Part shown: one piece after another, positions 6,453 through 41,854 of the stretch
How the letters are laid out: the number at the start of each line of letters is the position of its first letter
Position numbering within the stretch: position 1 is the stretch's first letter
IMG/VR virus record: IMGVR_UViG_3300027985_000843
Coordinates: 186,001-250,000 of that record
DNA: 64,000 nt
Strand: one strand, 5' to 3'
Program-made: the position numbers and the translations under genes
The notes under the pieces: model-generated
Databases searched by the model: none
Seen by the model: the letters and a program-made list of their open reading frames with translations, nothing else
What the model was told of the DNA's origin: nothing

Positions 6453-6517
6453 GCGGATTCCTCGGTTCTCACGTCTCCCCTCGGGGAGCTATCAACCAAG
6501 GGAGCCGCACAAGTAGA

Positions 6518-7150
6518 CTAAGGACGTCGAGCGGCTTCTTCCAACGCAGCCACTTCTTGCTGTCGTTGGGCGAATGTTTCGCGAGTCCCGGCACCTGATG
6601 GCAGAAGAGCCTCTCGCCGAGAAATGATCAGGCCCGTATCCGTGTCGTCACGGTCGAGGGTCGACTTGGTGCCGCCAGCATCGAGGGTGACCTTCCGCCG
6701 CAGCTTGGATATTCTCACCCGTCTTACCGTAGAGGTCCCCGCCTCCGGGTTGTAAGCCACGAAGCCGATCAGCAAGCGACGAGGATCGTCACATGTCTTG
6801 ACGTCCACATGTTCACGGAGGAAGTCGGCTACGACAGTCGGCTCAACGACCTGGTCGTCTGGAACCAACGGCTTGCCAAAGACAGGCCATTGGACACACG
6901 TAGCCTCGTCTTTGAGAACGCCTGCCTCCAGAAGGTCTCCCAGTTCCTCGGAAGGCTCCATCTGAACCGTTTCGCCCGTCTCGTTGTTGACAAACCGGTA
7001 GGCGACTACTCCTAGAAGAGCTTCTTCCGGCGAATCACAAGGGAGAAATCTCCCCCAGCCGTCCCCCACCATAGACTTGAGCTGACGCTCTGCCTCTTCT
7101 TGGCTTGAGACGACCCGAGGGGCACTACCTGAGGTGACTACGGTGCTCAT
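6518..7150 (-). CDS. Hypothetical protein (210 aa)
   Basis: Minus-strand ORF overlapping the upstream stop codon. Confidence 0.6.
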   Translation of the reverse strand: MSTVVTSGSAPRVVSSQEEAERQLKSMVGDGWGRFLPCDSPEEALLGVVAYRFVNNETGETVQMEPSEELGDLLEAGVLKDEATCVQWPVFGKPLVPDDQVVEPTVVADFLREHVDVKTCDDPRRLLIGFVAYNPEAGTSTVRRVRISKLRRKVTLDAGGTKSTLDRDDTDTGLIISRREALLPSGAGTRETFAQRQQEVAALEEAARRP

Positions 7151-8358
7151 CGCTCGAACGCCTCCGGGAACTCCTCGATGAGGCGTCGTTTGACCTCGCC
7201 GTCCGTCTCAGCAGCGGCGACGGCTCGGATGACGTCCGGACGGTCATCGTAATCCGCCTGGAGGCGAGCGATCTTCTTGCGAATGGGGTCGCCGAAACGG
7301 TAGTTGTCCGGGAAGTCGGGGCAGATAGCCACAGCGATGGTGCGGCACACGGCATCGTCCGCCGCATCCACGTTCCTGGTGGCCGGGGCGGGGGGAGGAG
7401 CCTCTTGAGCCTCTTGAGCCTGGGCATTCTTGTCGACGAGGCGAACCCCTCTGCGAGGTCCGTTGGTGGTCGTGAATCGGATGCCGCCTTCTTCGATGAC
7501 CTCGGTACGGTTCTGGCCGCCCGTCCCACCAAGGTCGGCGATCTCGGTGCCGCCACCCACCTCTGGAGTGAGCTGGAAGCCTTCAGTGGTACGTGCCTGA
7601 GGGGCTCGAACGCGACCCACCACCTGACGCTGAGGCTCTGCGTCCACAGGCTTCGTGGCCCGAGCAGCAGCCAACTCCATCTCGTATTCCATCAGCTCCT
7701 CGTCGGTGGCACCATTCCTGCGGGCTTCCTCAAGCAACTCCTCTCGCGTGCGACCCACACCCGGCCGGACACGCACCTTCTGCGCTTGCGAGATGACCGC
7801 ACCTGCCTTCATGGTGTCCACAGAGGAGCGCTTGGCTCTTTCACCTGCGATGGTCTGGAACTCGATGCCTGGGACCGGCACACCGTCCTGGGGCTCGACC
7901 GATACACCGAGATACCGCTGACCCGCAGTGGACTCCGAACGAGCCGTACGCTGCCGGCGATAATTGTCCTGATTCCGCTGACGAGTTGCAGCGGCGTGGT
8001 CGTTGACGTTCCCGACCTCTCGCTCTTCGTGGTCGATGTCCATGTTGACTGGTCGACGGGGAGCGGGGTCCATGGGGTTGCCACCATCAGCGGCACGCAT
8101 CGTCATACCGGCGGGCTGCGGACGCTCTTCGGGGGCATCAGGATCGTACCTGTTGGAAGGCACAAGCCATCCCGTTCGGAGGGCGCCTCTGAGCTGAGGC
8201 ATCATGATAGGTGCCATCCCCGCATAGGAGACGCTGGTGCCATCAAACTCGACCTCAGCACCCTTCGGCACGGTGATGCCACTTGAGCCCAACGCGAACG
8301 ACCGCGTTGCAACGAAGACCTGTACATGCCCCGACCGGAATTGGATCTGCTGATTCAT
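7147..8358 (-). CDS. Hypothetical protein (403 aa)
   Basis: Long ORF with GGAG upstream of the ATG and GC3-rich codon usage. Confidence 0.65.
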   Translation of the reverse strand: MNQQIQFRSGHVQVFVATRSFALGSSGITVPKGAEVEFDGTSVSYAGMAPIMMPQLRGALRTGWLVPSNRYDPDAPEERPQPAGMTMRAADGGNPMDPAPRRPVNMDIDHEEREVGNVNDHAAATRQRNQDNYRRQRTARSESTAGQRYLGVSVEPQDGVPVPGIEFQTIAGERAKRSSVDTMKAGAVISQAQKVRVRPGVGRTREELLEEARRNGATDEELMEYEMELAAARATKPVDAEPQRQVVGRVRAPQARTTEGFQLTPEVGGGTEIADLGGTGGQNRTEVIEEGGIRFTTTNGPRRGVRLVDKNAQAQEAQEAPPPAPATRNVDAADDAVCRTIAVAICPDFPDNYRFGDPIRKKIARLQADYDDRPDVIRAVAAAETDGEVKRRLIEEFPEAFER

Positions 8359-29595: not shown

Positions 29596-30818
29596 TACAC
29601 TGTCCTCGTTGTTCCCGGGGCCGTCAGCGGCAACCATGGGGTTGATAGGTCCTCGTGAACGTAGCCAGTATCGATATCAACACCTGTGTCCACCTCCCCG
29701 GGAGCGTTGTCCCCGTCCGGGAGGGTGTCGGCCCATGCTTCGGCCGTTTGCACCAGGTTGCCCTTGGCGCCTTCGTATTCGTCTCGACGGGCCACAGGGT
29801 CATCGTAGTCGCCCGGGAGGCCCGTTTCGGCGTGACGCTCGTTGATGCTCACATCCACGACGGGCGTATCACCAGAAGATTGTGGAGGTGCCCCCGGGAG
29901 ACCGCTGTGCGGGCCCCAGATGCCCTTTCCGTTGCCTTCGTCGGACGGGTTGGCGTAACCACCAGCCCCCTGCCCACGAGCCCCGTATCCGAGGCCCCAG
30001 TCCCAAGCATCGGTGGGCGTGTCGTCAGACGGCAGGGCTGTCTGGGCCCACTGCTGGGAAGACGCCTCCAGGTCACTGTAGTCGTACTGAGGCCCTTCAA
30101 GGCCCCAGTCGTCTTGGACAGCATCTTCCTGAGGATTGAACGATCCGTGAGGGCCGTCACCTCCCATGGGGTCGCGATTGTCCACGCGAGGGCCGCCCGT
30201 CTGAGCGTCAAGTCCTGCTAGAGCGTCGCCCTCACCAAGGAACCGGGCCACAACACTCGACGCAGAAGCTTGCTTCGTGGGATTGGGCCTCTCGGGTTCT
30301 TGGGGCGGGGCGTCCCCACCATCTGGCAGTTCCGACTTGGTGTCCTTCGGGCCGTCGTTTTCTTTCTCGATCTTTTCGATTTCGTCCTCGGCCTCTTCCT
30401 CGGGGTTGTCGAGAACGTGCTTGGACTCTTCCACGAACCTCTCGACGTCTTCCTGTTCGTTGTCGTCCAGGAGGGCCAGCTTCGGCTTCCAGTGGGGAGC
30501 GCTGATCTCGTCATAGAGCGTGTCAGAGATGGCACTGAGACGTTCACAGACGTCGTACAGGTCCTTACGAACCTGGGACACCTCGCGGATGTAGCCCCTA
30601 CCACCCAAACGGCCATCCGGACTGATGGTGGCGGACTTGAGTCGCGTGAAGTACCGGTAGGCTGTGAGGGCGTGCCCGAGGGCGACGCTGCAAGCCCACA
30701 GGGTCTGCGACATCGGCTTGAGCGCTTTCGGGTCGTACGAGTGATCTTTGGGGATCTCTCGCTTCTGAGCCGGCGGGGGTGGCTCCTCGAAGGCTGCTGT
30801 CTTGTCCCAGGTATCCAT
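29595..30818 (-). CDS. Acidic, partly disordered putative internal protein
   Basis: KTAAF and KQASASSVVARFL motifs. Asp/Gly/Pro-rich C-terminal half. Confidence 0.6.
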   Translation of the reverse strand: MDTWDKTAAFEEPPPPAQKREIPKDHSYDPKALKPMSQTLWACSVALGHALTAYRYFTRLKSATISPDGRLGGRGYIREVSQVRKDLYDVCERLSAISDTLYDEISAPHWKPKLALLDDNEQEDVERFVEESKHVLDNPEEEAEDEIEKIEKENDGPKDTKSELPDGGDAPPQEPERPNPTKQASASSVVARFLGEGDALAGLDAQTGGPRVDNRDPMGGDGPHGSFNPQEDAVQDDWGLEGPQYDYSDLEASSQQWAQTALPSDDTPTDAWDWGLGYGARGQGAGGYANPSDEGNGKGIWGPHSGLPGAPPQSSGDTPVVDVSINERHAETGLPGDYDDPVARRDEYEGAKGNLVQTAEAWADTLPDGDNAPGEVDTGVDIDTGYVHEDLSTPWLPLTAPGTTRTV

Positions 30819-30825
30819 GCTTGCC

Positions 30826-31110
30826 TCAGCCCTTCAACGGGTCCCCGTCTTGGAACAGGCGTTCGATGTAGAAAGCCCCACCTTCCTCACGAAGAGCCCA
30901 CAAGTCGTTCGTCGACTTGTGAATGAGGGCATCAGCAGCGGTTCGCTGGAAGCCCTTCAGATCGCTGAGTGCCGTGATCTTCACACGCTTCGGAGGGGCC
31001 ACAGGCTTCGCCTCACCCACCGGGCTGACGATCTGGGGCTCGCTCGCAAAGAAGGCATCCGTACCGGTTGCTCCGCCGGTCTCGATGCTGCTCAGTTTGA
31101 AGTTGCTCAT
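30826..31110 (-). CDS. Hypothetical protein (94 aa)
   Basis: AGGAG upstream and tight packing. Confidence 0.6.
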   Translation of the reverse strand: MSNFKLSSIETGGATGTDAFFASEPQIVSPVGEAKPVAPPKRVKITALSDLKGFQRTAADALIHKSTNDLWALREEGGAFYIERLFQDGDPLKG

Positions 31111-31118
31111 GTAGGCTC

Positions 31119-32018
31119 CTACGAGATCACTAGCTGAATGAGGATGTCGATATAGGAATTAGTGCTGTACCCGCTGACCCTGAGAGTCTCCTCGTAGGTA
31201 CCTCTCGCCATGCCTTCGATGGGTGCGCACGTAACGGTGGTCACCTGCATGCCTCCTGACGACAGGATCTCGGTCACAGGAGCGAAGCTCGACAACCAGT
31301 CGTCCGAAAGGCCAGTGAGCCTCTGGATCTGGTAGTCCAGCACGGAGCCGGCGGGACCGCTGTTTTCGATCGTGACCTGCTGACTCGGGATCGGCGGGAA
31401 CGCACCAGTAACCGGAGCCGTGACCGAGAAGGACATCACCAAGGTGGATGCCGAGACAGTGGCCTTGGGTCTGACCGTGATGGTCACAGGAAGGCTCTGT
31501 GGGTTGTTGGATGCGTTGGGGTCCTGAACCGTCACAGTCTCGCTGTAGGGGCTGCTAGCGCTCAGCAACAGTGTTGAATCGACGGACACCTCGAAGGTAC
31601 CGGACTCGTTCGCGGCGAGGCCGCCGACATTGGCAGGGCTGACCGAGACATAGCCCGCCGACGTCGAGAGGGTAGCCCCCAAAAGGGACCCAAACACACC
31701 ACTGTTGGTGAGCGTCACCTCTTGGGCGTCGCTGAAGCCTCGGCCCTCGTCCACCTCGATAGTGATAGACGAGGGAGGCCCAATGAGAATGCTCGGAAGG
31801 AAATTGGCTCGGATGTCAGTGATGGACTGAGCCATGGACTCGATCACTTCACCCGGAATGGGAATGCTATCCCGAAGGATGCCGTACGGGCTGACAACGT
31901 CCAGTACCTGGAAGGCAGGGGAGGCCCCAGACACATCCATCCGCGTCGTCCAGCGCCATGTTCCTGTGGCGACCTGGTACTGGAATTGATAGTCCTGAGT
32001 TCTGATGGCTGCTGACAT
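31119..32018 (-). CDS. Ig-like (BACON-type) repeat protein, probably virion surface
   Basis: Two similar modules (QEVTLTNSGVFGSLL..YVSVSP and QQVTIENSGPAGSVL..WLSSFAP). Start moved to MSAAIRT. Confidence 0.6.
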   Translation of the reverse strand: MSAAIRTQDYQFQYQVATGTWRWTTRMDVSGASPAFQVLDVVSPYGILRDSIPIPGEVIESMAQSITDIRANFLPSILIGPPSSITIEVDEGRGFSDAQEVTLTNSGVFGSLLGATLSTSAGYVSVSPANVGGLAANESGTFEVSVDSTLLLSASSPYSETVTVQDPNASNNPQSLPVTITVRPKATVSASTLVMSFSVTAPVTGAFPPIPSQQVTIENSGPAGSVLDYQIQRLTGLSDDWLSSFAPVTEILSSGGMQVTTVTCAPIEGMARGTYEETLRVSGYSTNSYIDILIQLVIS

Positions 32019-32067
32019 GGTCAAGACGGACCTCTCCACCCCTGAGAGAACATAAGTAGACTAGGGG

Positions 32068-32074
32068 CGGTGTA
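32068..32074 (+). promoter_or_regulatory. CGGTGTA element 10 nt before ATG 32085
   Basis: Same motif and spacing on the plus strand. Confidence 0.65.
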
Positions 32075-32084
32075 TGATCCGATC

Positions 32085-32309
32085 ATGACTTGGGATGTCG
32101 TTGTTTCGGTCGTCTTCCTCTTGGCCGTCCTGCTGACCATGGCTCGGTGCTTCTACTCGACCTACAAGCACCACCGACAGGTCGCGGACTGGTCCAGGGG
32201 AATGGATGCCGAAAGAGCGGAAATCGTGAGGCTGTCAAACGAGGGTCGGACGGATGAAGCGATCAAGTTGTGGGAAGCCCACCTCAAGAAACACCCACCC
32301 CTACCCTAG
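32085..32309 (+). CDS. Small membrane protein on the opposite strand
   Basis: N-terminal hydrophobic helix VVVSVVFLLAVLLTMA. CGGTGTA lies exactly 10 nt upstream of ATG 32085. Confidence 0.6.
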   Translation: MTWDVVVSVVFLLAVLLTMARCFYSTYKHHRQVADWSRGMDAERAEIVRLSNEGRTDEAIKLWEAHLKKHPPLP

Positions 32310-32983
32310 GTGCACTCATCTCCGCCCCGACCGGCCCACTGGGGCAACCGTACTTCTCGCAGGATATTGAACCGCTTACCATCCGAGATGGCCGAGAAGA
32401 TCCTGTAGTAGGGCTCGAAGGTTTCGTCTTCCTTGGCCGCTCTCTCCAGCACCTTGGCCGCCTTGAAGAAACGGTGTCTGACGCGACCCTGCGTCAGGTT
32501 GAGTCTGGATGCCACCTCGGACTGGCACGTGGTCTCCCACATGCCAACGAGGATGTCCACGTCGATGTTCCGCGTCTCCTTCGCCTTCATGGGGAAGATC
32601 TTCGGCAGGTCGCGTCGAAGATCTTCCTCGGTCACGTCGGGGATCGACAACAGGAACTTGATCCGTTGGATACCTCGGTCGAGGCGATAGCTCACGGCCG
32701 CCTGCGTGATGCCGAACATCGTGGCGATGTCAGCCTGACGCTTATTGCAGCAGAAATATAGGTGAATGAGGTCCGCTTCCCTTTCGGGAATACGATCCAG
32801 AAGGGGGGCTATGCGTTCCTCGAAGTCGTTGCCGTCTCCGAGGAACTCTTGCATGTCCTCAACAGAGACCTGGCACTCCTCGGCGTCGAGGTAGTCTTCC
32901 TCGTCATCGCATCTGGGATCGTATGACGGGAATCGGCTTGCCAACTCGTTGGGATCGATGGGGATGACGTACCCTGCTGCCAT
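32306..32983 (-). CDS. Tandem sigma70 region-4-like HTH protein
   Basis: LDRIPEREADLIHLYF..QADIATMFGITQAAVSYRLDRG and QSEVASRLNLTQGRVRHRFFKA. No region 2 is visible. Confidence 0.7.
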   Translation of the reverse strand: MAAGYVIPIDPNELASRFPSYDPRCDDEEDYLDAEECQVSVEDMQEFLGDGNDFEERIAPLLDRIPEREADLIHLYFCCNKRQADIATMFGITQAAVSYRLDRGIQRIKFLLSIPDVTEEDLRRDLPKIFPMKAKETRNIDVDILVGMWETTCQSEVASRLNLTQGRVRHRFFKAAKVLERAAKEDETFEPYYRIFSAISDGKRFNILREVRLPQWAGRGGDECT

Positions 32984-33026
32984 AAGAATCTCCGTGGACC
33001 CATCCCCGATCCCTACCGAACCCCTC

Positions 33027-34829
33027 TCACCCGAGAAGGATTCCGAGTAGCGGCGTCGGGTTCGTGTTTATCTCTCGCAGCCGGCTGGCTGCTGTTTCTA
33101 CATCCGGATTTGGGTCTGTCACGGAGACGTCGACGTCCGCGAGGGACATCAGCTCTCGATTTAGTCTGACCTGAGGTTCAGACGTGCGCAACCTTTCATA
33201 CTGTCCTTTGCTTACACCGGTCAAGCCCGACGAGTAGACACCATTGATCGTACCGTGAGCTTGGACCAGGGAGCACAGGACCTTCTTTGGGACACGCGGC
33301 ACCCCAGGCAGGTTGTCGGAACTGTCCCCGTAGAAGGCTCGCAAGTCCAGGAGTGTAGACGGGCCAACCCCAAAGGACTTCTTCACCGAGTCCGGGTCGT
33401 GCACCACATCTTTTCGACTCCCCACCCCTGGCACAAGCATGTAGGTTGTCTCCGTGACTAGAGACAGAAGATCACGATCCGTGGAAAAAATCAAGTTGTG
33501 TTGTTCCTTAAGTGAACCGCGCACGAGTGTCGCCAGGACGTCATCAGCCTCTTCACCCGTGTTTTCGGCCTGCCACACCCCACACAAGGGCAGGATCGAC
33601 CGAAGGTAATCCACCTGCGCAACGAAGCCCTCCGGGACCGGAGGCCGCTGAGCCTTGTACTCCCCGTAGACGGCCTTGCGTCGCCTTGAGCTACCATCCC
33701 ACGCCACATACAGTCGGGCTTCCGGATAACGCTTCTTGAGGGAACCGAGAGACCGGAGAAAGCCAAGGACAACACCTGTCGGTCGACCCTGGTCATCCTT
33801 GAGTTCGGACATGCCCGGAGCATGGAAGCATCGGCGAGCAAGGTTGTTTCCGTCCACCAAGACGTTCTGGATGACTTTCACGTTGTTGTCTTTCTTTCTC
33901 TTGGCGACGCGGTGCGCCAAAACTTCGATTTCCTTCTGTAGGAGGTTGATGCGTTCCAGGACGTCCTCGAACCAATACAGCTCCAAGAGCTTGCTCTCGA
34001 TGTGCTGTGTACGTCGATCGAAGTGCGTGTTGTAGAACGTCTTGACGAACGCCAACCTGGGACTGAACTGCGCGTTCCACTCGTCCAGCCATACGAATTG
34101 ATGGAGCTTGTCTTGAAGGTCGTCGGCACGGGACTTCTGATAGAAGGACCGGACGAAGGCGACTCGCTTGGACAACGAGCCGTCCCACGCAGATATGGAC
34201 TCAAGGTCCGACCACTTCCGACGAAGTTCGTCACCCCGAGACGCGTGCCACCGGAAGACCGGCCGTGCGAGACGTGTCCAGCCCCGCAGGGCCGTAAGTC
34301 GACTGAAGAACCCAGACAACGGAGTCCTCTTGACCACTTGTAGAAAGGGTCGAGGCAGCGTCACGATTGTCTGCTTGCTCCGTAGCTTGACGAACACCTG
34401 GACCATCCCCTGCTCGGGGATGTCCTCGACAACAGTGGCCTCGATGTTCTGGTAGGGGCCCGAACAGATCATCACTCGATCGCCCACTCCAATGCCCTGG
34501 TCGATCTCCTGATGAAGTTGCGACTGCATCCCAAGGATCTCTTCCTGGGAGATCAGAGACAGGCGCCCCTGCCCGTCTCTCAAGGCCGACTGCACGAAAC
34601 GGCTGTCCTCGATCCGTAGGTATGGGGCCGGATTCCCAGTGTACTCCACGAAGATGTAACCCTCGACAAGGTAATGGATGACCTTGTCCTCGCCTACCTG
34701 TGTCACAGCGGCAGGCACGAAAACGTTGGCCTTGGGGTCTTTCAAAGCACTCCGGAGGCCCCTCTTCAGGACCTCAGGGTCTTCCCCCTCGCTTCTGGGA
34801 GACAGCTCGAAAACAACCCAACCTGCCAT
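33027..34829 (-). CDS. NusG-like (NGN+KOW) domain fused to a Pol I-type 5'-3' exonuclease/flap nuclease
   Basis: N-terminus WVVFE..VFVP..LVEGYIFVE..GDRVMICSGPYQNIEATV. C-terminus LVDGNNL..WDG..YKAQR..EADD..STDRD..GDSSDNLPGV. Start moved to ATG 34829 (TGATG overlap with dnaX). Confidence 0.85.
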   Translation of the reverse strand: MAGWVVFELSPRSEGEDPEVLKRGLRSALKDPKANVFVPAAVTQVGEDKVIHYLVEGYIFVEYTGNPAPYLRIEDSRFVQSALRDGQGRLSLISQEEILGMQSQLHQEIDQGIGVGDRVMICSGPYQNIEATVVEDIPEQGMVQVFVKLRSKQTIVTLPRPFLQVVKRTPLSGFFSRLTALRGWTRLARPVFRWHASRGDELRRKWSDLESISAWDGSLSKRVAFVRSFYQKSRADDLQDKLHQFVWLDEWNAQFSPRLAFVKTFYNTHFDRRTQHIESKLLELYWFEDVLERINLLQKEIEVLAHRVAKRKKDNNVKVIQNVLVDGNNLARRCFHAPGMSELKDDQGRPTGVVLGFLRSLGSLKKRYPEARLYVAWDGSSRRRKAVYGEYKAQRPPVPEGFVAQVDYLRSILPLCGVWQAENTGEEADDVLATLVRGSLKEQHNLIFSTDRDLLSLVTETTYMLVPGVGSRKDVVHDPDSVKKSFGVGPSTLLDLRAFYGDSSDNLPGVPRVPKKVLCSLVQAHGTINGVYSSGLTGVSKGQYERLRTSEPQVRLNRELMSLADVDVSVTDPNPDVETAASRLREINTNPTPLLGILLG

Positions 34830-36337
34830 CAGACACCGTTTTGAGGAAAGAAGAACAGCCGGAACTCGCGAGACCACTGTTCAGTGGTCAGAATGTCGCC
34901 CTTGCTCAACCCGTTGGCGCCACGGAATTGGTGCGACCCGTTACTGGAGTTGCCGTTGAACCCTCGTGGCATCTTGTCCGGCCGAGCCTGACGATCGATC
35001 TCCGTGAGGGCACAAGGATCTCCCGACCCAAGATTGCCGATCTTGTCCGCTGGCTTCGAGGGCGGGGGAGCTGCAACTTTGGGTTCGGGAACCTTGGGTT
35101 CGGGCTTCGGTTCTGGGGCGGCCGCCACGGGCGCCTCAGGGGCCGCCACGGGCGCCTCTGCCTCCGGGACGGGCTCATGGGCCTCCGGCGCCTCCGAAGC
35201 TACCTGAGGCCGCTCTGAGGGCGGGGGAGGCGGGCTTACTGGGGCAGAGGTAAGTACAGGAGCCGAGACAACAACAGGCGGAGCCGCAGACTGCGCGGCC
35301 GAGGCCACAGGCAGACCGCTGGAACACCTGACCACGTCGCACACCAGACCGACCTTCGTGGGGCGAGACGACCGCAAGAAGTATTCTGCTAGTCGAACGA
35401 CGTCATCCCCGTAAACGGCGAACACTTGCTTCGCGAGGTCCTTGTCCATGTGACCGGACTCGGAGAAGATGCCGTGAGCCAGGCGATAAGAGTTCATGGC
35501 CGCCTCAGCTAGGCCGACGGTCACATCGTCTACGCCCACACGATCACAGGCTGCCTCTACCATGTCCACCGACTTCGAGGGATCCCCGAGCGAGAGCAAG
35601 ACCTCGTAATACCTCGAAACCAGAGCTAAGTCCAGATATTCCCGCACGGTGGGTAAATCTACCCGGCCAAGTTGGGCAATCATCTCCAGGCGATTGAGGA
35701 CGTCACGAACATGGCCGTCGCTGTAGTCGATGACCGTCATGACGGCATCGTCCTCAAAAGGTATCCCTTCGGCCGTGAGAACTTTCTGCATGCGTTCGAG
35801 AATCGCCTCGCGGGAGATGCGCCGAATCGGGTACTCCTCACACCGCGACCTGATGGTGCCCCGAATCTTCGAAGGCTCAGTAGTACAGAAGATGCCCACG
35901 AGCCGCTTGTCCTCCAGGGGCTTGAGCAGCACGTCCTGCGAGTCCCGGCTCATCCGGTGCATCTCGTCGAACAGATAGATCCGCTTGGGAGCCCCCACGA
36001 CAGAGAACGACAGATCCTCCACGATCTTTCGAACGCTGTCGATGGTGCCCCGGCTCGCGGCGTCTAGCTCATGGAACGCCTCGGCGGTCTCACTCAGGAT
36101 GGCCTGGCAATTGTCGCACTGATTGCAGGGGTCGCCACTGTCCTGGATGTTCTGACACAACAGGGCCCGACCAAGAATGCGTGCGAGAGTCGTCTTCCCC
36201 TGACCGTGACCGCCCGAGAATATGTAGCTTGTGTCCAGGGCAGTGCCCTTGCGAATACGCTCCCGGAGGACCTGGACCGAGCCGTCTTGGCCCAGGACAT
36301 CCCCGAACGTCATGGGTCTGTATTTGACATCCCACAC
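34829..36337 (-). CDS. dnaX: DNA polymerase III gamma/tau-like clamp loader ATPase
   Basis: KYRP..FGDVLGQ, GQGKTT, C..CNQCDNC, ELDAAS, DEMH, TIRSRC, and a Pro/Ala-rich linker. Confidence 0.92.
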   Translation of the reverse strand: MWDVKYRPMTFGDVLGQDGSVQVLRERIRKGTALDTSYIFSGGHGQGKTTLARILGRALLCQNIQDSGDPCNQCDNCQAILSETAEAFHELDAASRGTIDSVRKIVEDLSFSVVGAPKRIYLFDEMHRMSRDSQDVLLKPLEDKRLVGIFCTTEPSKIRGTIRSRCEEYPIRRISREAILERMQKVLTAEGIPFEDDAVMTVIDYSDGHVRDVLNRLEMIAQLGRVDLPTVREYLDLALVSRYYEVLLSLGDPSKSVDMVEAACDRVGVDDVTVGLAEAAMNSYRLAHGIFSESGHMDKDLAKQVFAVYGDDVVRLAEYFLRSSRPTKVGLVCDVVRCSSGLPVASAAQSAAPPVVVSAPVLTSAPVSPPPPPSERPQVASEAPEAHEPVPEAEAPVAAPEAPVAAAPEPKPEPKVPEPKVAAPPPSKPADKIGNLGSGDPCALTEIDRQARPDKMPRGFNGNSSNGSHQFRGANGLSKGDILTTEQWSREFRLFFFPQNGV

Positions 36338-36340
36338 GTG

Positions 36341-36856
36341 TCACTCCTCGTCTTCGCCCTCGCCCTGTGACAGCTCTTCTTCTCCCAGTTCTTCCTGCCC
36401 CTGCCCCTCCTCCGAGAGGATCTGTTCGAGGTCGACTTCCTTGGAGATGGACACGAAGGTGTGTAGGTCGGCGTTCCACGCACCGTAACGGTCCAGGATC
36501 GTACCGAACTCCTGCACATCGGGCTCTCGGATCTTCCAAGAGATCTCGCCGGTGTCTTCGTTCTCCTCGCCGTAGCAACGCTCCAATAAGTGGTCGATGA
36601 GGGCCGTGCGCTGCTGGTCGTCCAGCTCGTTCCACATGTCCGCTGCGACCTCGACCACGAAGTCCTTCCCGATGATCCATTCCAGGAAGCCGCTCAGCTT
36701 GCGCACCTTCCCAAGGATCTTTCTGCCACCCTTCGAGCTGGCTTCGCTCACGAAGCAATACAGCATTCTGGCAGTGGCGATCTCCGGATGGTAGTTGGGG
36801 ATGAGACCCGCAGCGATGTTTTCCAAGCTTTCGGCGTTTTCCCAAGTCTTAGGCAT
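36341..36856 (-). CDS. Phage metallopeptidase-like protein with degenerate HExxH motif
   Basis: DFVVEVAADMWNELDDQQRTALIDHLLERC..EPDVQEF matches the putative phage metallopeptidase pattern, but HLLER replaces HELxH. Confidence 0.6.
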   Translation of the reverse strand: MPKTWENAESLENIAAGLIPNYHPEIATARMLYCFVSEASSKGGRKILGKVRKLSGFLEWIIGKDFVVEVAADMWNELDDQQRTALIDHLLERCYGEENEDTGEISWKIREPDVQEFGTILDRYGAWNADLHTFVSISKEVDLEQILSEEGQGQEELGEEELSQGEGEDEE

Positions 36857-36857
36857 G

Positions 36858-37562
36858 TTACTCTCCTAGCTGTTCTCGGATGAAGTTCTGTAGCTTACGG
36901 TCACCCCAAGCGAGCCATAGTTCGTTGGGGTCTTTCACTCGACCCTTGCCGTCGAGCCTGGGGACTCGCGGGAAGACGACATCGTGTATTCGGTCGAACT
37001 TGTCGTGGTGTTCTCGAATGACACGAGCTGCCGCGTCTCGGCCCTTAGGGTCCATATCGTACGCCAACCACAACTCGTCGACAACCCTGCGAAGGCATCG
37101 AGCTGCCTCACTGGTCAGGTGGTTGGTCAGGGTAGACACAATGTTCGGGCGTGTCCTCTGAATGGGAAAAAGATCGAATGCACCTTCGGTAAGGACCACG
37201 TACTTGGTCTCCCAAGCACTTGCCATGGCCTGACCCAGGCCGAACAGGACGGGTTCCTCATCGTACACGGAGAAGTGCGAATAGCCCTTCTTGTTCACGT
37301 CCACGTGCCGGAGCTGGAACCCCTTGAACTGACACAGCGTGTTGGTCAGGGGCAAGACAAACACGTCCCGAAGCCAACCAGTGCTCTGGTACGTCTCGTA
37401 GAGAATGTCAGCCCCTTCGATGTCGGGCAACCCGTTCGAGATGTACCCGAGGCGGTACAGGCTGATCTGCTCATCGCTCACACCACGAGCCCACAAGGCT
37501 TCCCTCTCCCGGTCCGTCAGTTGACCGTGAGCGTAGTCGACAAGTGCCTCGATCCAACTCAT
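36858..37562 (-). CDS. DnaG-like TOPRIM primase core
   Basis: LFGL..VVLTEGAFD..LAYDMD..KDPNE. No N-terminal CHC2 zinc finger. Confidence 0.8.
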   Translation of the reverse strand: MSWIEALVDYAHGQLTDREREALWARGVSDEQISLYRLGYISNGLPDIEGADILYETYQSTGWLRDVFVLPLTNTLCQFKGFQLRHVDVNKKGYSHFSVYDEEPVLFGLGQAMASAWETKYVVLTEGAFDLFPIQRTRPNIVSTLTNHLTSEAARCLRRVVDELWLAYDMDPKGRDAAARVIREHHDKFDRIHDVVFPRVPRLDGKGRVKDPNELWLAWGDRKLQNFIREQLGE

Positions 37563-38164
37563 CCGACCATCACCAAAGAGCGGTCGGCCTTTCGAATCAG
37601 GACAGCCACGTGGTCATACGAACGAACGTAGGCCCCCACCGAGTCAGACGCCAGCAGGGACTTCCCCTCTGGAAGGTCGGATGCCAGGATCAGAAGTCCG
37701 TCGGAAGTACGGGAGACGTAGCCCTGCATCATCATCAGCCGTTCTGCTTGTTCGACGGGCATGGCTTCTCCGCAGGCTTCCTCAAGAGTTGACGGTGGGA
37801 CTACCAGGGCCCTCGGTGTTTCTCCAAGAGACCGCATGACGTCCTGGGCTTCGGTCAGATCCTTACACCGGTTGGACCAGCCCTCCCTCTCAGAAACCTC
37901 CGACAGGACACGAAACAGTTCCACCATGAGCGGACCTTCTTTCCCAGGAGGGCAGAAGGTCGGAGCGAACCGAACGATGCCGTCGCGGGATAGCCTCGTC
38001 TGAAGAAACGTGCCCCGCATGTTGCTCGACAGAAAGGGCGCATTGCAAAGCTCGTCCGAATACTCCATGAGGACGGGCACAGCGAAGCCTGCCCCCCTTG
38101 ACTGATCTGCCCTTCGGCGGATGCGATCAGTTTTCAGCAGGATCTCAAGAGCTGACGTCCTCAT
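37559..38164 (-). CDS. Hypothetical protein resembling the C-terminal half of the major capsid protein
   Basis: By-eye alignment to 12484..13365 (see findings). Start moved to MRTSAL. Confidence 0.5.
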   Translation of the reverse strand: MRTSALEILLKTDRIRRRADQSRGAGFAVPVLMEYSDELCNAPFLSSNMRGTFLQTRLSRDGIVRFAPTFCPPGKEGPLMVELFRVLSEVSEREGWSNRCKDLTEAQDVMRSLGETPRALVVPPSTLEEACGEAMPVEQAERLMMMQGYVSRTSDGLLILASDLPEGKSLLASDSVGAYVRSYDHVAVLIRKADRSLVMVG

Positions 38165-38768
38165 TCTTCGACCTCCGAATCTGGACCAGTCTGCCGTCCC
38201 CATCCTGCATCTCCAGCAAAGCGGGAGCGTCCGGGCCCGGTGGCAAGAGGTCGAAGTCGGTGACCGCCTGAATCGGAACGATCTGAATGCGCAACACCCA
38301 CCGGTACCACAGAGCTTTCCACCACGGCACGAGGGCGGGGAGGGACGGAGACTCGTCGAGGACCCACAGAAGTTCCCGAACTGCCGGCATGTTGCTAGCC
38401 ACCCAGGCCGGATCGGCTACATCCCTCAGGAATTCGTTCCACAGAGTCCGCTTCGATCGGGTGGGCTGGAAGTAGGGACACTTCATGGCATCGACGTCGT
38501 CCTCGCAGATGGCGCCTTTCCACTGCTCGATGTCTTCGGCACCCAGCATGCACAGACCGATCGTTTGATCCACGGGCTCACCGTTTACGGCGATCCGATT
38601 GTACTGGTCGTTCGTCTCGCCGTAGACTTCCTTGCGACTATCCAGCGGCTGCAACCAGTTGTGAGCACACAAGTGCGGCCGTCGCTGCTGTGCCTCGTGA
38701 ATGCGACGGTCCAACTCCTCACACAGAAGCTGCCGGATTCTGGACTTGATCTCTCCACGGTCGACCAT
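38145..38768 (-). CDS. Cys-containing hypothetical protein
   Basis: Start moved to MVDRGE (TGATG overlap). Contains CAHN..CML..C..CPYF. Confidence 0.55.
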   Translation of the reverse strand: MVDRGEIKSRIRQLLCEELDRRIHEAQQRRPHLCAHNWLQPLDSRKEVYGETNDQYNRIAVNGEPVDQTIGLCMLGAEDIEQWKGAICEDDVDAMKCPYFQPTRSKRTLWNEFLRDVADPAWVASNMPAVRELLWVLDESPSLPALVPWWKALWYRWVLRIQIVPIQAVTDFDLLPPGPDAPALLEMQDGDGRLVQIRRSKNEDVSS

Positions 38769-39442
38769 CAGAGCCTCTTCACCTTCAGGTGCTCCAGGCC
38801 GTCTTCCTCGACACAGGAGCACCGGTATGCCTGGTCTGCGTGTTCCGCAAAGGCCGGCTTGTGGGTCACGAGTACAACGTCCAGCCCCATCTTGGAGGAC
38901 AGCTCTCGTAGTAGTTGGCTCGTCGCCAGCACGTATTCGTCGGAGATAGCCAACAGAGTCTCATCCAGCAACAAGATGGGGTACCGCTTCAACCGAATGA
39001 TGGTCAGCAAGCGGATGACAAGGGAGGCCATGCTCGAAGGGCCGCCGCCAAAGGATTCCAGCGGCTTGCCCCGGTGTGATAGAGGGTCATCCTTCTTCTT
39101 GCTTCGGATGAAAAAGTCGATCGACACCTTGCCGTACTTCTGACTCACGTCCGCTTCGAACAGCAGATCCTGGTCATCGAAAATCGTCTGAAAGCTCTCT
39201 GAAACCAGGTCCTCCACAGAACGCACCTGATTGACAAGGAGCGCATCCATCAGGACTTGGTACAACTCCCCGACCTTCGACAACACGTCGATCTCGGTCG
39301 AAAGGTCTGCAACCTCTCGTTGCTTGGACTCCCTCTCGGATTGGAGACGATCTCGGAGCGTGGTCAGCCGGACTCCCTTGGCCGCCACGCTCCGGACACG
39401 CTGCCTCAACCCATCGAGGGAGCGTACCTCGTCACTCGACAC
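38768..39442 (-). CDS. SbcC/Rad50-like ATPase, C-terminal half
   Basis: Signature-like ESFGGG, Walker B ILLLDE and H-loop LVTH, after a short coiled coil. Confidence 0.85.
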   Translation of the reverse strand: MSSDEVRSLDGLRQRVRSVAAKGVRLTTLRDRLQSERESKQREVADLSTEIDVLSKVGELYQVLMDALLVNQVRSVEDLVSESFQTIFDDQDLLFEADVSQKYGKVSIDFFIRSKKKDDPLSHRGKPLESFGGGPSSMASLVIRLLTIIRLKRYPILLLDETLLAISDEYVLATSQLLRELSSKMGLDVVLVTHKPAFAEHADQAYRCSCVEEDGLEHLKVKRL

Positions 39443-40644
39443 AGGAATACCCCTTCCTTGTTGTCGTCGTCGGGAATGACGACCTTGCCATCTCGATTGA
39501 GGTGGTATTCCTCGACCGTGCGGAGAAGCGTCATCTCGCTGCGATTTGCCGTCGCCGGAATCACAGCCACTCGGAGGATGACAGCATTCCCTCGAACGGG
39601 TTCGATCAAGCCGCGAAGGTGCTCCGTGCCAATACTGGCTGCGAAGTCCTTGTCGCTGGCGTCTCCGCCGAAGTCATCGGTGTCTGAAACGACAGGATTG
39701 GCGCCGACAGGAGCAGATGTGACAGGCCCCGCCCGGCCGACAGCGTGTAGCTGCAACATCTTGTGCTCGGCGTCGTACTTGATTCGGATCTTGTCGGACC
39801 CGCTGGAACTGACGTGCTTGAAGGCACGTACCAAGGTCACCTTCGGAATCGCCAGCACGTAGCCGTCATTCTTGAGGGCGTAATACTTGAACTTCTTGTG
39901 CTCCTCGACCGTGCTGGACCAGCCTACAGCCGACCCGTTCGGAGCCACGATAAATCGAATGGGGCCCATGTGGACGGTGACGTCCTCGTTCCCGCACTTC
40001 GAAAGGAAGGATGTCACGAGACCGACATCCTTCGTGCTGATTGCGAAGGCTCGGCCGCACAGACCCTCGCTGAAGTAGTAGCAAGATCGGATGTTGTCCG
40101 CCCCGAACATCGTCCCGTCGCCGCCCTTCAGGGTCGAGTCGAAGAGCTGCAACGTCTTGTACACCTCGGGCACAGTGTCCTTCTTGGCGACGTGGGCGTT
40201 GACGCAGGCCAGGGCATCCTTGAGGATTGCCGGCGGAACCTTGTAGGTATCCTCGGAGATCTCGTCATCCACGGTCTTCATCAGACGAGGATCGAACGAG
40301 GACACGTTGGCGTTGGCGCCGCCCTCCGTCTCGTACTTGATCCAGAACCGATCTTCCTTCTCGTCATGACCGTATTCGATGTCGATCCAGCCGTCCAGGA
40401 ACTTGAGCCCTTCGGCGGCAAGCGACGGGTAGATGAACGAGCCGTCACCCTCCGACTCGATGACAGGGACATTGACTCTCACGCGGTGCGTGTCGTCTCT
40501 GCCATGGATAGAGCACACCCCGTCCTTGACCACGAACAGGTACCCCGTGCTGTTTTCCTTCTGGGGTGTCGCGGCCGACGGAGACACGATGCTGCTGACG
40601 CTGAGCGCCTCATTGAGGGCTTCTGTGCTGACCCGGATCTTCAT
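39406..40644 (-). CDS. dnaN: Probable DNA polymerase III beta sliding clamp (divergent)
   Basis: MKIRVSTEALNEAL start, alternating alpha/beta pattern and 412 aa length. DnaX, HolA and HolB are present in the same module. Confidence 0.6.
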   Translation of the reverse strand: MKIRVSTEALNEALSVSSIVSPSAATPQKENSTGYLFVVKDGVCSIHGRDDTHRVRVNVPVIESEGDGSFIYPSLAAEGLKFLDGWIDIEYGHDEKEDRFWIKYETEGGANANVSSFDPRLMKTVDDEISEDTYKVPPAILKDALACVNAHVAKKDTVPEVYKTLQLFDSTLKGGDGTMFGADNIRSCYYFSEGLCGRAFAISTKDVGLVTSFLSKCGNEDVTVHMGPIRFIVAPNGSAVGWSSTVEEHKKFKYYALKNDGYVLAIPKVTLVRAFKHVSSSGSDKIRIKYDAEHKMLQLHAVGRAGPVTSAPVGANPVVSDTDDFGGDASDKDFAASIGTEHLRGLIEPVRGNAVILRVAVIPATANRSEMTLLRTVEEYHLNRDGKVVIPDDDNKEGVFLCRVTRYAPSMG

Positions 40645-40922
40645 TTTTCCTCCTTGTCGAACTCTTCCAAAGCGCCCTCGACCTCTTGCAGATCTTGCTC
40701 GAACGAAGTGAGGAGAGTCTCCAGCTCCGCATGGGCCTGGTCTCTCTGCTCCTTGAGCCGACGAGGGTCGAAGCCGGCGTCTTCGATCTCCTTGCCGATG
40801 TCGGAAAGTTCCTGCATGCGAGCTTCGAGCTGGCCTCTGAGCTTGTCCCTCTTACGAGTGACGCTTGCGTGTCGGGTGAGAGCATTCTCTACCCGTTGTT
40901 TCAGTTGAGCGACTGTTGCCAT
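40641..40922 (-). CDS. Coiled-coil protein (93 aa)
   Basis: Continuous heptad pattern. CGGTGTA lies 10 nt upstream of the ATG. Confidence 0.7.
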   Translation of the reverse strand: MATVAQLKQRVENALTRHASVTRKRDKLRGQLEARMQELSDIGKEIEDAGFDPRRLKEQRDQAHAELETLLTSFEQDLQEVEGALEEFDKEEK

Positions 40923-40932
40923 CCTTCTCTCC

Positions 40933-40939
40933 TACACCG
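40933..40939 (-). promoter_or_regulatory. CGGTGTA element 10 nt before ATG 40922
   Basis: Recurring motif. An SD-like AGGAG is also present here. Confidence 0.55.
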
Positions 40940-41854
40940 CTACGACCGCTTCTTGGCTATCTTTTGGACGACCGACGCTCCCCAGGTACACCGGGAAGGG
41001 GTCGCGAACTCGCAGAATCGACAGTTGTCCTCATTCGCCTTGGGTTTGAACAGCCCTTTGGCGAGAGCCATCTTGTCGGTCTCGTCCAAGTCCGGAATCC
41101 TTGCCGACAGCTCTTCGATCGAGTCCAGGGCCGCGAGGACGTCCTCCAGCAACTGGTCCGTGTCGGCCTGCGAGAACTCCACCCAGTCGATACTACGAGG
41201 GGGAGTGAATCGCCAGTACAGAAACCCCAGCTTGTCGGGCAGCCGGCCATGCTGCAACTGGTACAGCATCCCGTACCAGTAGAGCTGCCGGGGGTCCACG
41301 TACTTGCCACCCCACTTCGAGCCCTTGCCGTCAAGGATGATCAGGTCCTTGTGGGGGGCAATTCGACGGATGATGAAGTCCGCCCGCCCCGCGATCTTGT
41401 GGCCCTTGACGACCTGGTCCAGCTTGACCTCTGCACGGGCGTACGGGCCGAGGAATCGACCGAACTTGATGCTGTCAATCCCACGAGCGATGGACTTTCG
41501 AACGTCATCGATCAGCTCTTCCTTGTCCGCGTACATCCCGCGAGGGTTCTGGCCCTTGCCTTCACCCTTCCACTTGATGATGCCGCATTTGCCGTCCCAT
41601 GACGGGGACGTCTGATCTCTGATGACCTTGTCCACCGTGGGGCGGACCTTCCGCAGGAGCTTGTCCCTCACAGACGCGGGATCTCGCCACAACTCCTCGT
41701 TGTAGAACTCCTCGAAGATGATCCCGATGACCGAACCGTACAGGGACCCGCCCTTGTCCTCAGGCTCGTCCATCTCCGTCTTGTTGATGTACTTGTGCCA
41801 GAACGCGTAAGCACACGAGCTGAACAGCTTGAATCCGGAATACGAGATGTACAT
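40940..41854 (-). CDS. PD-(D/E)XK nuclease, Cas4/AddB-like with four Cys
   Basis: SYS..SSCAY, GRADF, ILDGKGS, QLYWY and CRFCEF..C. Confidence 0.85.
   Translation of the reverse strand: MYISYSGFKLFSSCAYAFWHKYINKTEMDEPEDKGGSLYGSVIGIIFEEFYNEELWRDPASVRDKLLRKVRPTVDKVIRDQTSPSWDGKCGIIKWKGEGKGQNPRGMYADKEELIDDVRKSIARGIDSIKFGRFLGPYARAEVKLDQVVKGHKIAGRADFIIRRIAPHKDLIILDGKGSKWGGKYVDPRQLYWYGMLYQLQHGRLPDKLGFLYWRFTPPRSIDWVEFSQADTDQLLEDVLAALDSIEELSARIPDLDETDKMALAKGLFKPKANEDNCRFCEFATPSRCTWGASVVQKIAKKRS

What the first reader, a model, noticed from the sequence alone, without database searches (positions are those of the whole stretch)
33027..34829. NusG-family transcription factor fused to a Pol I-type 5'-3' (flap) nuclease
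Seen: one uninterrupted 600-aa ORF carries an NGN domain (LVEGYIFVE), a KOW motif (GDRVMICSGPYQNIEATV), a linker of roughly 36-aa Trp/Phe-rich helical repeats (W..LS.R.AFV..FY....D.L..KL), and a complete 5' nuclease domain with acidic active-site motifs (DG, EADD, DRD, GDSSDN). Established: NusG paralogues bind the RNA polymerase clamp, and 5' nucleases remove RNA primers, flaps and R-loop RNA. I do not recognise this fusion. It sits between dnaX and the sigma-4 protein, at the replication/structural boundary. Inference: it may tether a nuclease to elongating RNAP (R-loop or replication-conflict removal, or torpedo-like termination), or couple late transcription to lagging-strand processing.
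Basis: partly seen in the sequence, partly recalled or inferred. Interest (0 to 1): 0.8.

Follow-up and report, generated by a model that had tools for sequence, protein, structure and literature searches.

The report
NusG-like factor fused to flap nuclease
A clade of huge (300-450 kb) environmental phages encodes one protein that joins an RNA-polymerase-binding NusG-type module to the phage's only DNA flap/primer-removing nuclease, a conserved and so far undescribed fusion that may physically link transcription to DNA replication.

Summary
Window 33027..34829 (-) is one intact 600-aa ORF with four parts: an NGN-KOW (NusG-type) module, a ~145-aa helical spacer containing a real internal ~37-aa duplication, a complete Pol I-type 5' nuclease (FEN), and a conserved hydrophobic C-terminal tail.

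The window lies in a 371.7-kb phage contig from a hydrothermal-vent metagenome. More than 160 metagenomic homologues share the architecture, and 163 of 166 keep all nine catalytic acidic residues. The gene always sits between the clamp-loader gene and a sigma-region-4 gene.

Relatives show three other states at the same locus:
- NusG-like gene alone.
- NusG-like gene and a separate FEN gene.
- NusG-like+spacer gene and a separate FEN gene, cut exactly at the domain boundary.

The NusG-like factor is therefore an old transcription gene of this clade that captured the FEN. One relative fuses the same NGN-KOW module to a sigma factor. The contig (estimated 78% complete) shows no phage RNA polymerase, no RNase H and no other 5' nuclease.

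The most likely function is a host-RNAP-bound elongation factor that carries the phage's flap/primer nuclease. RNAP binding, the nuclease's substrate at RNAP and clamp binding are all inferred. I found no paper describing the fusion. I rate it a new variant of a known kind, interest 0.7.

The parts
33027..34829 (-). Whole gene: 600-aa NusG-like/spacer/FEN fusion protein. The ATG at 34829 overlaps the clamp-loader stop codon (TGATG); the stop is at 33027-33029.
34548..34829 (-). NGN domain (aa 1-94). Invariant W4, L9, P18, P39, L54, G57, Y58, F60 (the GY.FV motif).
34326..34547 (-). Connecting helix (aa 95-110) and five-stranded KOW barrel (aa 111-168).
33882..34325 (-). Helical spacer (aa 169-316). 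It has four predicted long helices and is Trp/Leu/Arg-rich. Mean pairwise identity is 27% but length is kept at 142-185 aa. No fold or sequence match outside the family.
33975..34199 (-). Internal tandem duplication within the spacer: aa 211-246 and aa 247-285.
33879..33881 (-). In-frame GTG (V317) at the spacer/nuclease boundary. This is where the separate FEN genes of split relatives start. A candidate internal start, not shown to be used.
33117..33881 (-). Pol I-type 5' nuclease / flap endonuclease domain (aa 317-571). Contains PF02739 (33369-33863) and PF01367 (33126-33365), nine invariant acidic residues, the arch motif R384/Y391/K392/R395, and a variant H3TH loop PGVPRVPKK.
33030..33074 (-). 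C-terminal tail (aa 586-600). Family consensus is INPxPILxxFFG, which resembles a PIP or clamp-binding motif. The window's version is NPTPLLGILLG.
34829..36337 (-). Upstream gene: clamp loader (DnaX/DNA_pol3_delta2-like), translationally coupled to the fusion gene.
32306..32983 (-). Downstream gene: protein with two sigma-70 region-4 HTHs. It is the invariant neighbour of the NusG-like gene in all relatives, including those without a FEN.
36341..40644 (-). Rest of the conserved replication block: PhageMetallopep (36341-36856), Toprim primase (36858-37562), orf214 (37559-38203), sliding-clamp-like processivity factor (39406-40644).

Best explanation
The protein is a bifunctional phage factor.

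N-terminal half: a divergent NusG/RfaH-type elongation factor (NGN + KOW). It most likely docks on the host RNA polymerase, as all NusG-family NGN domains do. The phage brings sigma-like proteins but no polymerase of its own.

C-terminal half: the phage's only Pol I-type flap endonuclease, with a full catalytic site. It ends in a conserved hydrophobic tail that resembles a sliding-clamp-binding peptide.

Between them: a ~145-aa four-helix spacer.

The fusion therefore places the enzyme that removes RNA primers, 5' flaps and RNA:DNA hybrid ends on transcribing RNAP, and possibly links it to the phage clamp. This would matter in a very large genome with long co-directional operons that is replicated and transcribed at once. 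The most likely job is co-transcriptional removal of RNA:DNA hybrids and flaps where transcription and replication meet, with the NGN also acting as a processivity and anti-termination factor.

Shown: domain identities, intact catalytic residues, conservation, synteny, fusion and fission states, absence of another 5' nuclease or an RNAP on the contig.

Inferred: RNAP binding, the substrate at RNAP, clamp binding.
For: (1) NGN-KOW identity comes from three independent routes: profiles, predicted structure, and a relative in which the same NGN-KOW module (37% identical, hhalign 99.9%) is fused to a sigma-70 r2+r4 factor. That fusion ties the module to RNAP.

(2) The NusG module is as constrained as the catalytic domain. 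Mean pairwise identity is NGN 54%, KOW 62%, FEN 62%, spacer 27%.

(3) The nuclease is Pol I-type (M. smegmatis Pol I 1.6e-31; FenA TM 0.78). All nine acidic residues are kept in 163 of 166 homologues.

(4) It is the only PF02739 hit in the 371.7-kb contig. The PolA gene lacks a 5' nuclease. No RNase H was found. No RNAP was found with PF00562, PF00623 or a DFDGD motif scan; the PF00940 (T7-type) search is uninformative because its controls did not respond. A sigma-70 r2 protein is present.

(5) The link is conserved:
- More than 120 full-length homologues at 45-70% identity on contigs up to 452 kb.
- About 53 fused and about 17 split among the 75 closest 50%-identity representatives.
- Split genes stay adjacent, overlap by ATGA, and are cut exactly at the spacer/FEN boundary.
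- The fused/split state changed at least twice on the NGN-KOW tree.

(6) Synteny from the clamp gene through the clamp loader, the fusion gene and the sigma-4 gene to terL holds in about 30 loci.

(7) The tail consensus INPxPILxxFFG is present in 99 of 120 homologues and is kept on the FEN of split forms. T4 uses comparable hydrophobic/acidic C-termini on gp43, gp55 and gp33 to bind its clamp (PMC2988020).
Against: - There is no direct evidence that the NGN binds RNAP. The single sequence falls below Pfam NusG and KOW thresholds and far below the NusG equivalog cut-off.
- Deeper relatives have the NusG-like gene next to the sigma-4 gene with no FEN. The NusG-like factor therefore works without a nuclease.
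- Split forms show that covalent linkage is dispensable.
- A start codon (M or V, M in 58 of 120 against a 1.7% background) is retained 2-3 residues before the nuclease. Free FEN may be made as well.
- The full-length model has pTM 0.51, so no fixed geometry between the domains is predicted.
- The clamp-motif reading is by resemblance only. A scan of the phage's other proteins for the same tail was inconclusive.
- The contig is estimated only 78% complete, so absences are provisional.
Confidence: 0.5

Rival explanations
1. Clamp-coupled late transcription, analogous to T4 and Mu. The NGN sits on the beta' clamp helices (the gp55/sigma-2 site) and the neighbouring sigma-4-like protein sits on the beta flap (the gp33 site). 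The FEN with its C-terminal tail holds the phage sliding clamp left at nicks and Okazaki junctions. Replication would then activate or sustain transcription of the structural genes that start just downstream.
For: - The gene sits directly after the clamp loader, before a sigma-4-like gene, at the boundary to the packaging and structural genes (terL) in all loci.
- The C-terminal tail is conserved and hydrophobic.
- In T4, gp55 docks on the beta' coiled-coil and gp33 mimics sigma-4, and both carry clamp-binding C-termini (PMC2988020, PMC7892883).
- Phage Mu also enlists the beta clamp for late transcription (PMC12867686).
Against: - The ancestral stand-alone NusG-like proteins end at the KOW and have no tail.
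- The sigma-4-like protein's conserved C-terminus does not resemble the FEN tail.
- The model gives no reason for all nine catalytic residues to be conserved.
- Clamp binding is untested.
Confidence: 0.15
2. Two independent activities in one reading frame. A NusG-like antiterminator for long phage operons and a replication FEN became joined by loss of a stop codon between overlapping neighbour genes. The fusion gives co-expression only, and free FEN is also made from the internal start.
For: - Relatives carry the NusG-like gene alone, or carry separate genes.
- ATGA-type overlaps make read-through fusion easy.
- M or V is retained at the boundary, with purine-rich upstream sequence in many homologues.
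- The spacer is poorly conserved in sequence (27%).
Against: - The fused state persists across lineages only about 45% identical and is the majority state.
- The spacer is a retained ~145-aa structured element with conserved Trp positions and constrained length, not a random read-through.
- The spacer also stays on the NusG side in split forms, next to the FEN gene.
- In one deeper branch the FEN gene sits exactly here as a separate gene.
Confidence: 0.25
3. Torpedo-like termination or transcript clearance. The RNAP-bound factor uses the 5'-3' nuclease on the nascent transcript or its hybrid to dislodge RNAP. This would be analogous to Spt5 with FttA in archaea or Spt5 with Xrn2 in eukaryotes.
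For: - NusG-family factors recruit or stimulate 5'-3' RNA nucleases in the other two domains of life (PMC11616081, PMC11695829).
- The NGN-KOW model superposes on Spt5 of the FttA pre-termination complex (9bct_G, TM 0.65).
Against: - Pol I-type FENs are structure-specific DNA-flap and hybrid nucleases, not processive single-strand RNA exonucleases (established knowledge).
- The nuclease is the only candidate primer-removal enzyme on the contig and carries a clamp-like tail. Both point to replication.
Confidence: 0.07

Closest known systems
Bacterial NusG and its specialised paralogues (RfaH, LoaP, UpxY)
   Same: Two-domain NGN + KOW architecture. Full-length match to the NusG model and NusG/RfaH/Spt5 as the only structural matches. 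The conserved GY.FV strand motif is present. Like RfaH and LoaP, it belongs to a mobile or horizontally moving genome with long operons.
   Different: Phage-encoded and too divergent to pass the NusG, LoaP or RfaH family cut-offs. A helix joins NGN and KOW. The KOW is followed by a 145-aa helical spacer and an enzyme domain. To my knowledge no described bacterial NusG paralogue carries a catalytic domain, and no paper was found in the searches.
Pol I 5' nuclease domain and stand-alone bacterial or phage FENs (M. smegmatis FenA, E. coli ExoIX/Xni, T5 D15, T4 RNase H)
   Same: PF02739 + PF01367 are present, with nine acidic metal ligands and the arch motif. TM 0.78 to FenA; 1.6e-31 to M. smegmatis Pol I.
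   Different: Fused downstream of a transcription-factor module rather than to a polymerase. The H3TH loop reads PGVPRVPKK instead of PGVxGIGxKTA and is invariant in the family. A conserved C-terminal hydrophobic tail is added.
Spt5-FttA (archaea) and Spt5-Xrn2 (eukaryotes) nuclease-elongation factor complexes
   Same: A NusG-family factor on the polymerase is coupled to a 5'-3' nuclease (PMC11616081, PMC11695829).
   Different: Those couplings are non-covalent. The nucleases are beta-CASP and XRN RNA exonucleases unrelated to FEN, and their role is termination. This is an analogy of logic only, not family membership.
T4 late-transcription machinery (gp45 clamp, gp44/62 loader, gp55, gp33)
   Same: Clamp and clamp-loader genes sit next to RNAP-binding factors. 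One partner is expected on the beta' coiled-coil and a sigma-4-like partner on the flap. A hydrophobic C-terminal tail is present (PMC2988020, PMC7892883).
   Different: No sequence relation to gp55 or gp33. The beta'-side partner here is NusG-type and carries a nuclease. Clamp binding is untested.

Membership tests
NusG/Spt5 family | NGN domain fold | tested here: met
   AF2 pLDDT is about 90-97 over aa 1-110. RfaH NGN Z 9.8 (97 aa), E. coli NusG NGN Z 8.6; Foldseek 6gov_G 5.6e-9.
NusG/Spt5 family | KOW domain (five-stranded barrel with KOW motif) following the NGN | tested here: met
   Z 11.7, rmsd 1.1 A, 30% identity to the T. maritima NusG KOW. The family profile aligns through the KOW of 2lq8. 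Pfam KOW on the single sequence is 18.1 bits, below the 22.3 cut-off.
NusG/Spt5 family | Passes curated family thresholds (Pfam PF02357; NCBIfam NusG, RfaH, LoaP, UpxY) | tested here: not met
   PF02357 scores 15.9 bits against 22.2. TIGR00922 scores 34.5 against 135.7, LoaP 25 against 125, RfaH 16.4 against 144.5. It is a divergent paralogue, not an orthologue of any named subfamily.
NusG/Spt5 family | Binds the RNAP beta' clamp helices and bridges the cleft | not testable with these tools
   Indirect support only: a sigma r2+r4 fusion to the same module, sigma-4 gene adjacency, and no phage RNAP found.
Pol I-type 5' nuclease / FEN (PF02739 + PF01367) | Both Pfam domains above the gathering score | tested here: met
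   120.2 bits against 34.3 and 48.1 bits against 40.
Pol I-type 5' nuclease / FEN (PF02739 + PF01367) | Complete set of acidic metal-binding residues and arch basic/aromatic residues | tested here: met
   D326, D378, E427, D429, D430, D451, D453, D502, D505 and R384, Y391, K392, R395 are invariant. They align to Pol I and Taq. 163 of 166 homologues keep the acidic set.
Pol I-type 5' nuclease / FEN (PF02739 + PF01367) | Canonical H3TH glycine-rich loop (GVxGIGxKTA) | tested here: inconclusive
   The loop is replaced by the invariant PGVPRVPKK. The fold is predicted intact (pLDDT above 90). The effect on DNA or K+ binding is unknown.
Pol I-type 5' nuclease / FEN (PF02739 + PF01367) | Flap endonuclease / 5'-3' exonuclease activity | not testable with these tools
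   Requires an enzyme assay.
Sliding-clamp client proteins (PIP-box or clamp-binding-motif bearers) | Terminal peptide matching a clamp-binding consensus and binding the cognate clamp | tested here: inconclusive
   The conserved tail INPxPILxxFFG (99 of 120) resembles Qxx[LI]xxFF but lacks the Q. The window's own tail is LLGILLG. No matching tail was found on PolA or other ORFs. Binding is untested.
Spt5-FttA / Spt5-Xrn2 torpedo systems | beta-CASP or XRN-family 5'-3' exoribonuclease partner | tested here: not met
   The nuclease is PIN-like FEN/Pol I type. Only the logic is analogous.

The most novel reading that the evidence does not exclude
The protein is a physical bridge between the replisome and host RNA polymerase. 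It would be a NusG-type factor that rides on elongating RNAP while carrying an active flap endonuclease and a clamp-binding tail. Primer, flap and R-loop processing (and perhaps clamp-dependent activation of late genes) would then be done from the transcription complex itself. That would be a new class of NusG-tethered enzyme, specific to a large clade of huge phages. The sigma-NGN fusion in a relative would be a second member of the same design principle.
Probability: 0.3. Interest if true: 0.85.

Novelty: new variant of a known kind. Interest (0 to 1): 0.7.

Why it matters
NusG/Spt5 is the only transcription factor conserved in all domains of life. Its known bacterial paralogues act only by binding partners through the KOW domain. 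A NusG paralogue that covalently carries a DNA/RNA-hybrid nuclease would be a new way to put an enzyme on RNAP. It is conserved in hundreds of huge-phage genomes and sits between the clamp-loader gene and a sigma-like gene.

It would also give a concrete, expressible handle on how very large phage genomes reconcile simultaneous replication and transcription. The open questions it addresses are R-loop and primer removal, replication-transcription conflicts, and replication-coupled late transcription.

The natural fused, split and stand-alone series offers built-in controls for experiments.

Tried and rejected
- Frameshift or assembly artefact: rejected. An independent contig is identical, and more than 100 homologues are fused in the same frame.
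- Upstream GTG start at 34877 (616 aa): rejected in favour of the ATG at 34829. Homologues start there and it gives a TGATG overlap.
- Fold or family for the helical spacer: nothing credible. The PDB profile search gave only coiled-coil noise such as dynactin p50 at 0.003. Foldseek pdb, AFDB and BFVD, VIA wide, and ESM Atlas features (best 0.47) gave nothing for the spacer.
- Phage-encoded RNAP as the NGN target: none found with PF00562, PF00623 or a DFDGD motif scan. The PF00940 search returned nothing, but its controls were silent too, so it is uninformative. Divergent phiKZ-type enzymes cannot be excluded, and the contig is 78% complete.
- Same C-terminal tail on other replication proteins of this phage: inconclusive.
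- Cultured-phage relatives: tblastn against 50,697 phage records found only the nuclease part, at 36% identity or less.
- Bacterial or prophage relatives in GTDB genomes: none.
- Promoter and terminator scan of 30500-41500: nothing above shuffles. This is consistent with one long operon.
- Direction of evolution inside the fused clade (fusion or fission): the tree backbone is unresolved.
- P0155 (304 aa) as a spacer-bearing stand-alone form: rejected. Its extra 129 aa are N-terminal.
- Literature: seven searches found no description of the fusion.
Full report
**1. What is there**

Window 33027..34829 on the minus strand is one open frame. The ATG at 34829 overlaps the stop of the upstream clamp-loader gene as TGATG. 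Fifty homologues align from that ATG, so the product is 600 aa. The 616-aa version from the upstream GTG is not supported.

An independently built contig from the source sample, a hydrothermal-vent metagenome, is identical over 32900-35000. It has no indels and depth 13. The window belongs to a 371,739-bp IMG/VR virus record estimated 78% complete. A large terminase lies 7 kb downstream.

**2. Domains**

*C-terminal half.* It passes both Pfam 5' nuclease models (9e-35 and 1.7e-12). It matches Pol I equivalogs at 1.7e-51 and M. smegmatis Pol I at 1.6e-31. It superposes on FenA with TM 0.78. The nine acidic residues and the arch motif are invariant in 50 homologues. Of 166 long homologues, 163 keep the acidic set. 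The H3TH loop is a family-specific variant, PGVPRVPKK.

*N-terminal 170 aa.* It matches the full length of the NusG model (E 1.7e-8), then LoaP, UpxY and RfaH more weakly. It also matches phrog_6386, annotated 'transcription antiterminator'. A family profile hits Thermotoga NusG at 2e-9. The AF2 models have mean pLDDT 86 and 89. They match only NusG, RfaH and Spt5 in PDB, AFDB and BFVD. By VIA the KOW scores Z 11.7 and the NGN Z 9.8. The single sequence is below the curated NusG and KOW cut-offs. It is therefore a divergent paralogue, not an orthologue of any named subfamily.

*Spacer.* Residues 172-314 are predicted as four long helices. Residues 211-246 and 247-285 are a significant duplication (z 9.2; hhalign 98%). 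No sequence or fold relative of this spacer was found.

*Tail.* The last ~15 residues form a conserved tail, INPxPILxxFFG, found in 99 of 120 homologues.

**3. Distribution and constraint**

The word-index search returned more than 120 full-length homologues. They are 45-70% identical, 552-650 aa long, and sit on contigs up to 441 kb. IMG/VR gave 26 loci on contigs up to 452 kb.

An exhaustive profile search with the N half found 397 representatives at 50% clustering, 75 of them at E 1e-30 or better. Of those 75, about 53 are long (fused) and about 17 are 270-400 aa without a nuclease. The ESM Atlas cluster has 161 members, all viral.

No relative was found in cultured-phage records beyond the nuclease part, nor in GTDB genomes.

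Mean pairwise identity by region:
- NGN 54%
- KOW 62%
- spacer 27%, with length held at 142-185 aa
- FEN 62%
- tail 42%

The NusG module is under the same constraint as the enzyme.

**4. Context and evolutionary series**

About 30 loci share one gene order: clamp-like factor, orf214, Toprim primase, PhageMetallopep, clamp loader, [this gene], sigma-r4 protein, three unknown ORFs, terL.

Four states occur at the bracketed position:
- (a) A NusG-like gene of ~178 aa alone, directly followed by the sigma-4 gene (L036, L037, L039).
- (b) A NusG-like gene of 182 aa plus a separate 321-aa FEN gene (L005).
- (c) A NusG-like+spacer gene of ~300-320 aa plus a separate FEN gene. The two overlap by ATGA or lie close, and the cut is exactly at the spacer/FEN boundary. 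Two such forms (L001/L002 and L003/L004) each recur in a second data set (L001-L004, L035, L038).
- (d) The fusion.

On the NGN-KOW tree the stand-alone proteins form a separate clade. The fused and type-(c) proteins share another clade with an unresolved backbone and at least two fused/split changes.

The NusG-like factor is thus an old partner of the sigma-4 gene, and the FEN joined it later. One 50%-cluster representative, P0221, fuses sigma-70 regions 2 and 4 to the same NGN-KOW module (37% identity, hhalign 99.9%). It is a single contig, but it independently ties the module to RNAP.

**5. The phage's other equipment**

- The fusion is the only PF02739 hit on the contig.
- PolA is present without a 5' nuclease.
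- No Pol III alpha and no RNase H were found.
- No RNAP beta or beta' domains and no convincing catalytic motif were found. The PF00940 (T7-type RNAP) search is uninformative because its controls were also silent.
- A sigma-70 r2 protein exists elsewhere on the contig.

The phage therefore most likely redirects host RNAP, and this protein is its candidate primer/flap nuclease.

**6. Internal start**

Split FEN genes begin at the position of V317. In the fused genes an in-frame ATG, GTG or TTG lies 2-4 codons before the QN(V/I)xVDG strand in every locus examined, often after purine-rich sequence. Among 120 proteins, 118 have M or V in the three positions before that strand. M occurs in 58, against a 1.7% background. 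This may be a relic of the separate gene or a working internal start. Val could also be structural. In the window the codon is the GTG at 33879-33881.

**7. Mechanism**

The best-supported reading is an RNAP-bound NusG-type factor that carries the phage's flap/primer nuclease and possibly a clamp-binding tail (confidence 0.5). The NGN of NusG-family proteins binds the beta' clamp helices at the upstream edge of the transcription bubble (bioRxiv 10.1101/324400). A nuclease on a ~145-aa helical arm there would reach upstream DNA, where nascent RNA can re-anneal. It would also be positioned where replication forks meet RNAP.

Rivals:
- A T4-like clamp-activated late transcription device (0.15; PMC2988020, PMC7892883, PMC12867686).
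- Two independent activities merely co-expressed (0.25).
- A torpedo-like terminator analogous to Spt5-FttA or Spt5-Xrn2 (0.07; PMC11616081, PMC11695829).

RNAP binding, substrate choice and clamp binding are all inferred.

**8. Novelty**

Seven literature searches found no description of the fusion. JGI's pipeline labels some homologues with both names. Both domains are known kinds. The covalent NusG-enzyme design, its spacer, and its conserved place between the clamp loader and a sigma-4 protein in a huge-phage clade are new.

Verdict: new variant of a known kind, interest 0.7.

Noticed in passing
L040:3612-5237 (protein P0221): A 541-aa protein joins Sigma70_r2 (aa 51-113) and Sigma70_r4 (aa 215-263) to the same phage NGN-KOW module (aa 323-492, 37% identical to the family). 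It is a sigma factor fused to a NusG-like domain. It was seen on one 18-kb phage-like contig that also carries Ku and a helicase.
   Followed up: partly
L005:4152-6008; L019 and L020 about 5278-7593; L022 about 5225-7564: Clamp-loader genes of several relatives carry ~1.1-1.3 kb insertions near the P-loop. Pfam hits PT-HINT and Intein_splicing in L005, so these are probably inteins. The window's clamp loader has none.
   Followed up: no
window 32306-32983 (-): The sigma-4-like neighbour has two region-4 HTH matches and no region 2. Its C-terminus (FNILREVKLPQW..RGGDEC) is nearly invariant in all relatives. It may act as a flap-binding sigma-4 mimic. Its function is unknown.
   Followed up: partly
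G000 C1:87320-90265 (-), outside the window: The family A DNA polymerase (981-aa frame) lacks a 5' nuclease domain. The phage also encodes a clamp-like factor and a clamp loader, an unusual combination with a PolA-type replicase.
   Followed up: partly
window 36341-36856 (-): A PhageMetallopep (PF18894) gene sits between the primase and the clamp loader in every relative, inside the replication block. Its role there is unexplained.
   Followed up: no
window 34829-34900 (-), C-terminus of the clamp loader: The clamp loader ends in a conserved motif (LTPxxWRxxFE in relatives; EQWSREFRLFFF in the window). This could be another protein-docking peptide.
   Followed up: no
window 1-64000: Most of the larger called ORFs across the 64-kb window are on the minus strand. 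No sigma-70-type promoter or excess of terminators was found in 30500-41500. This suggests very long transcription units that would benefit from a processivity or anti-termination factor.
   Followed up: partly
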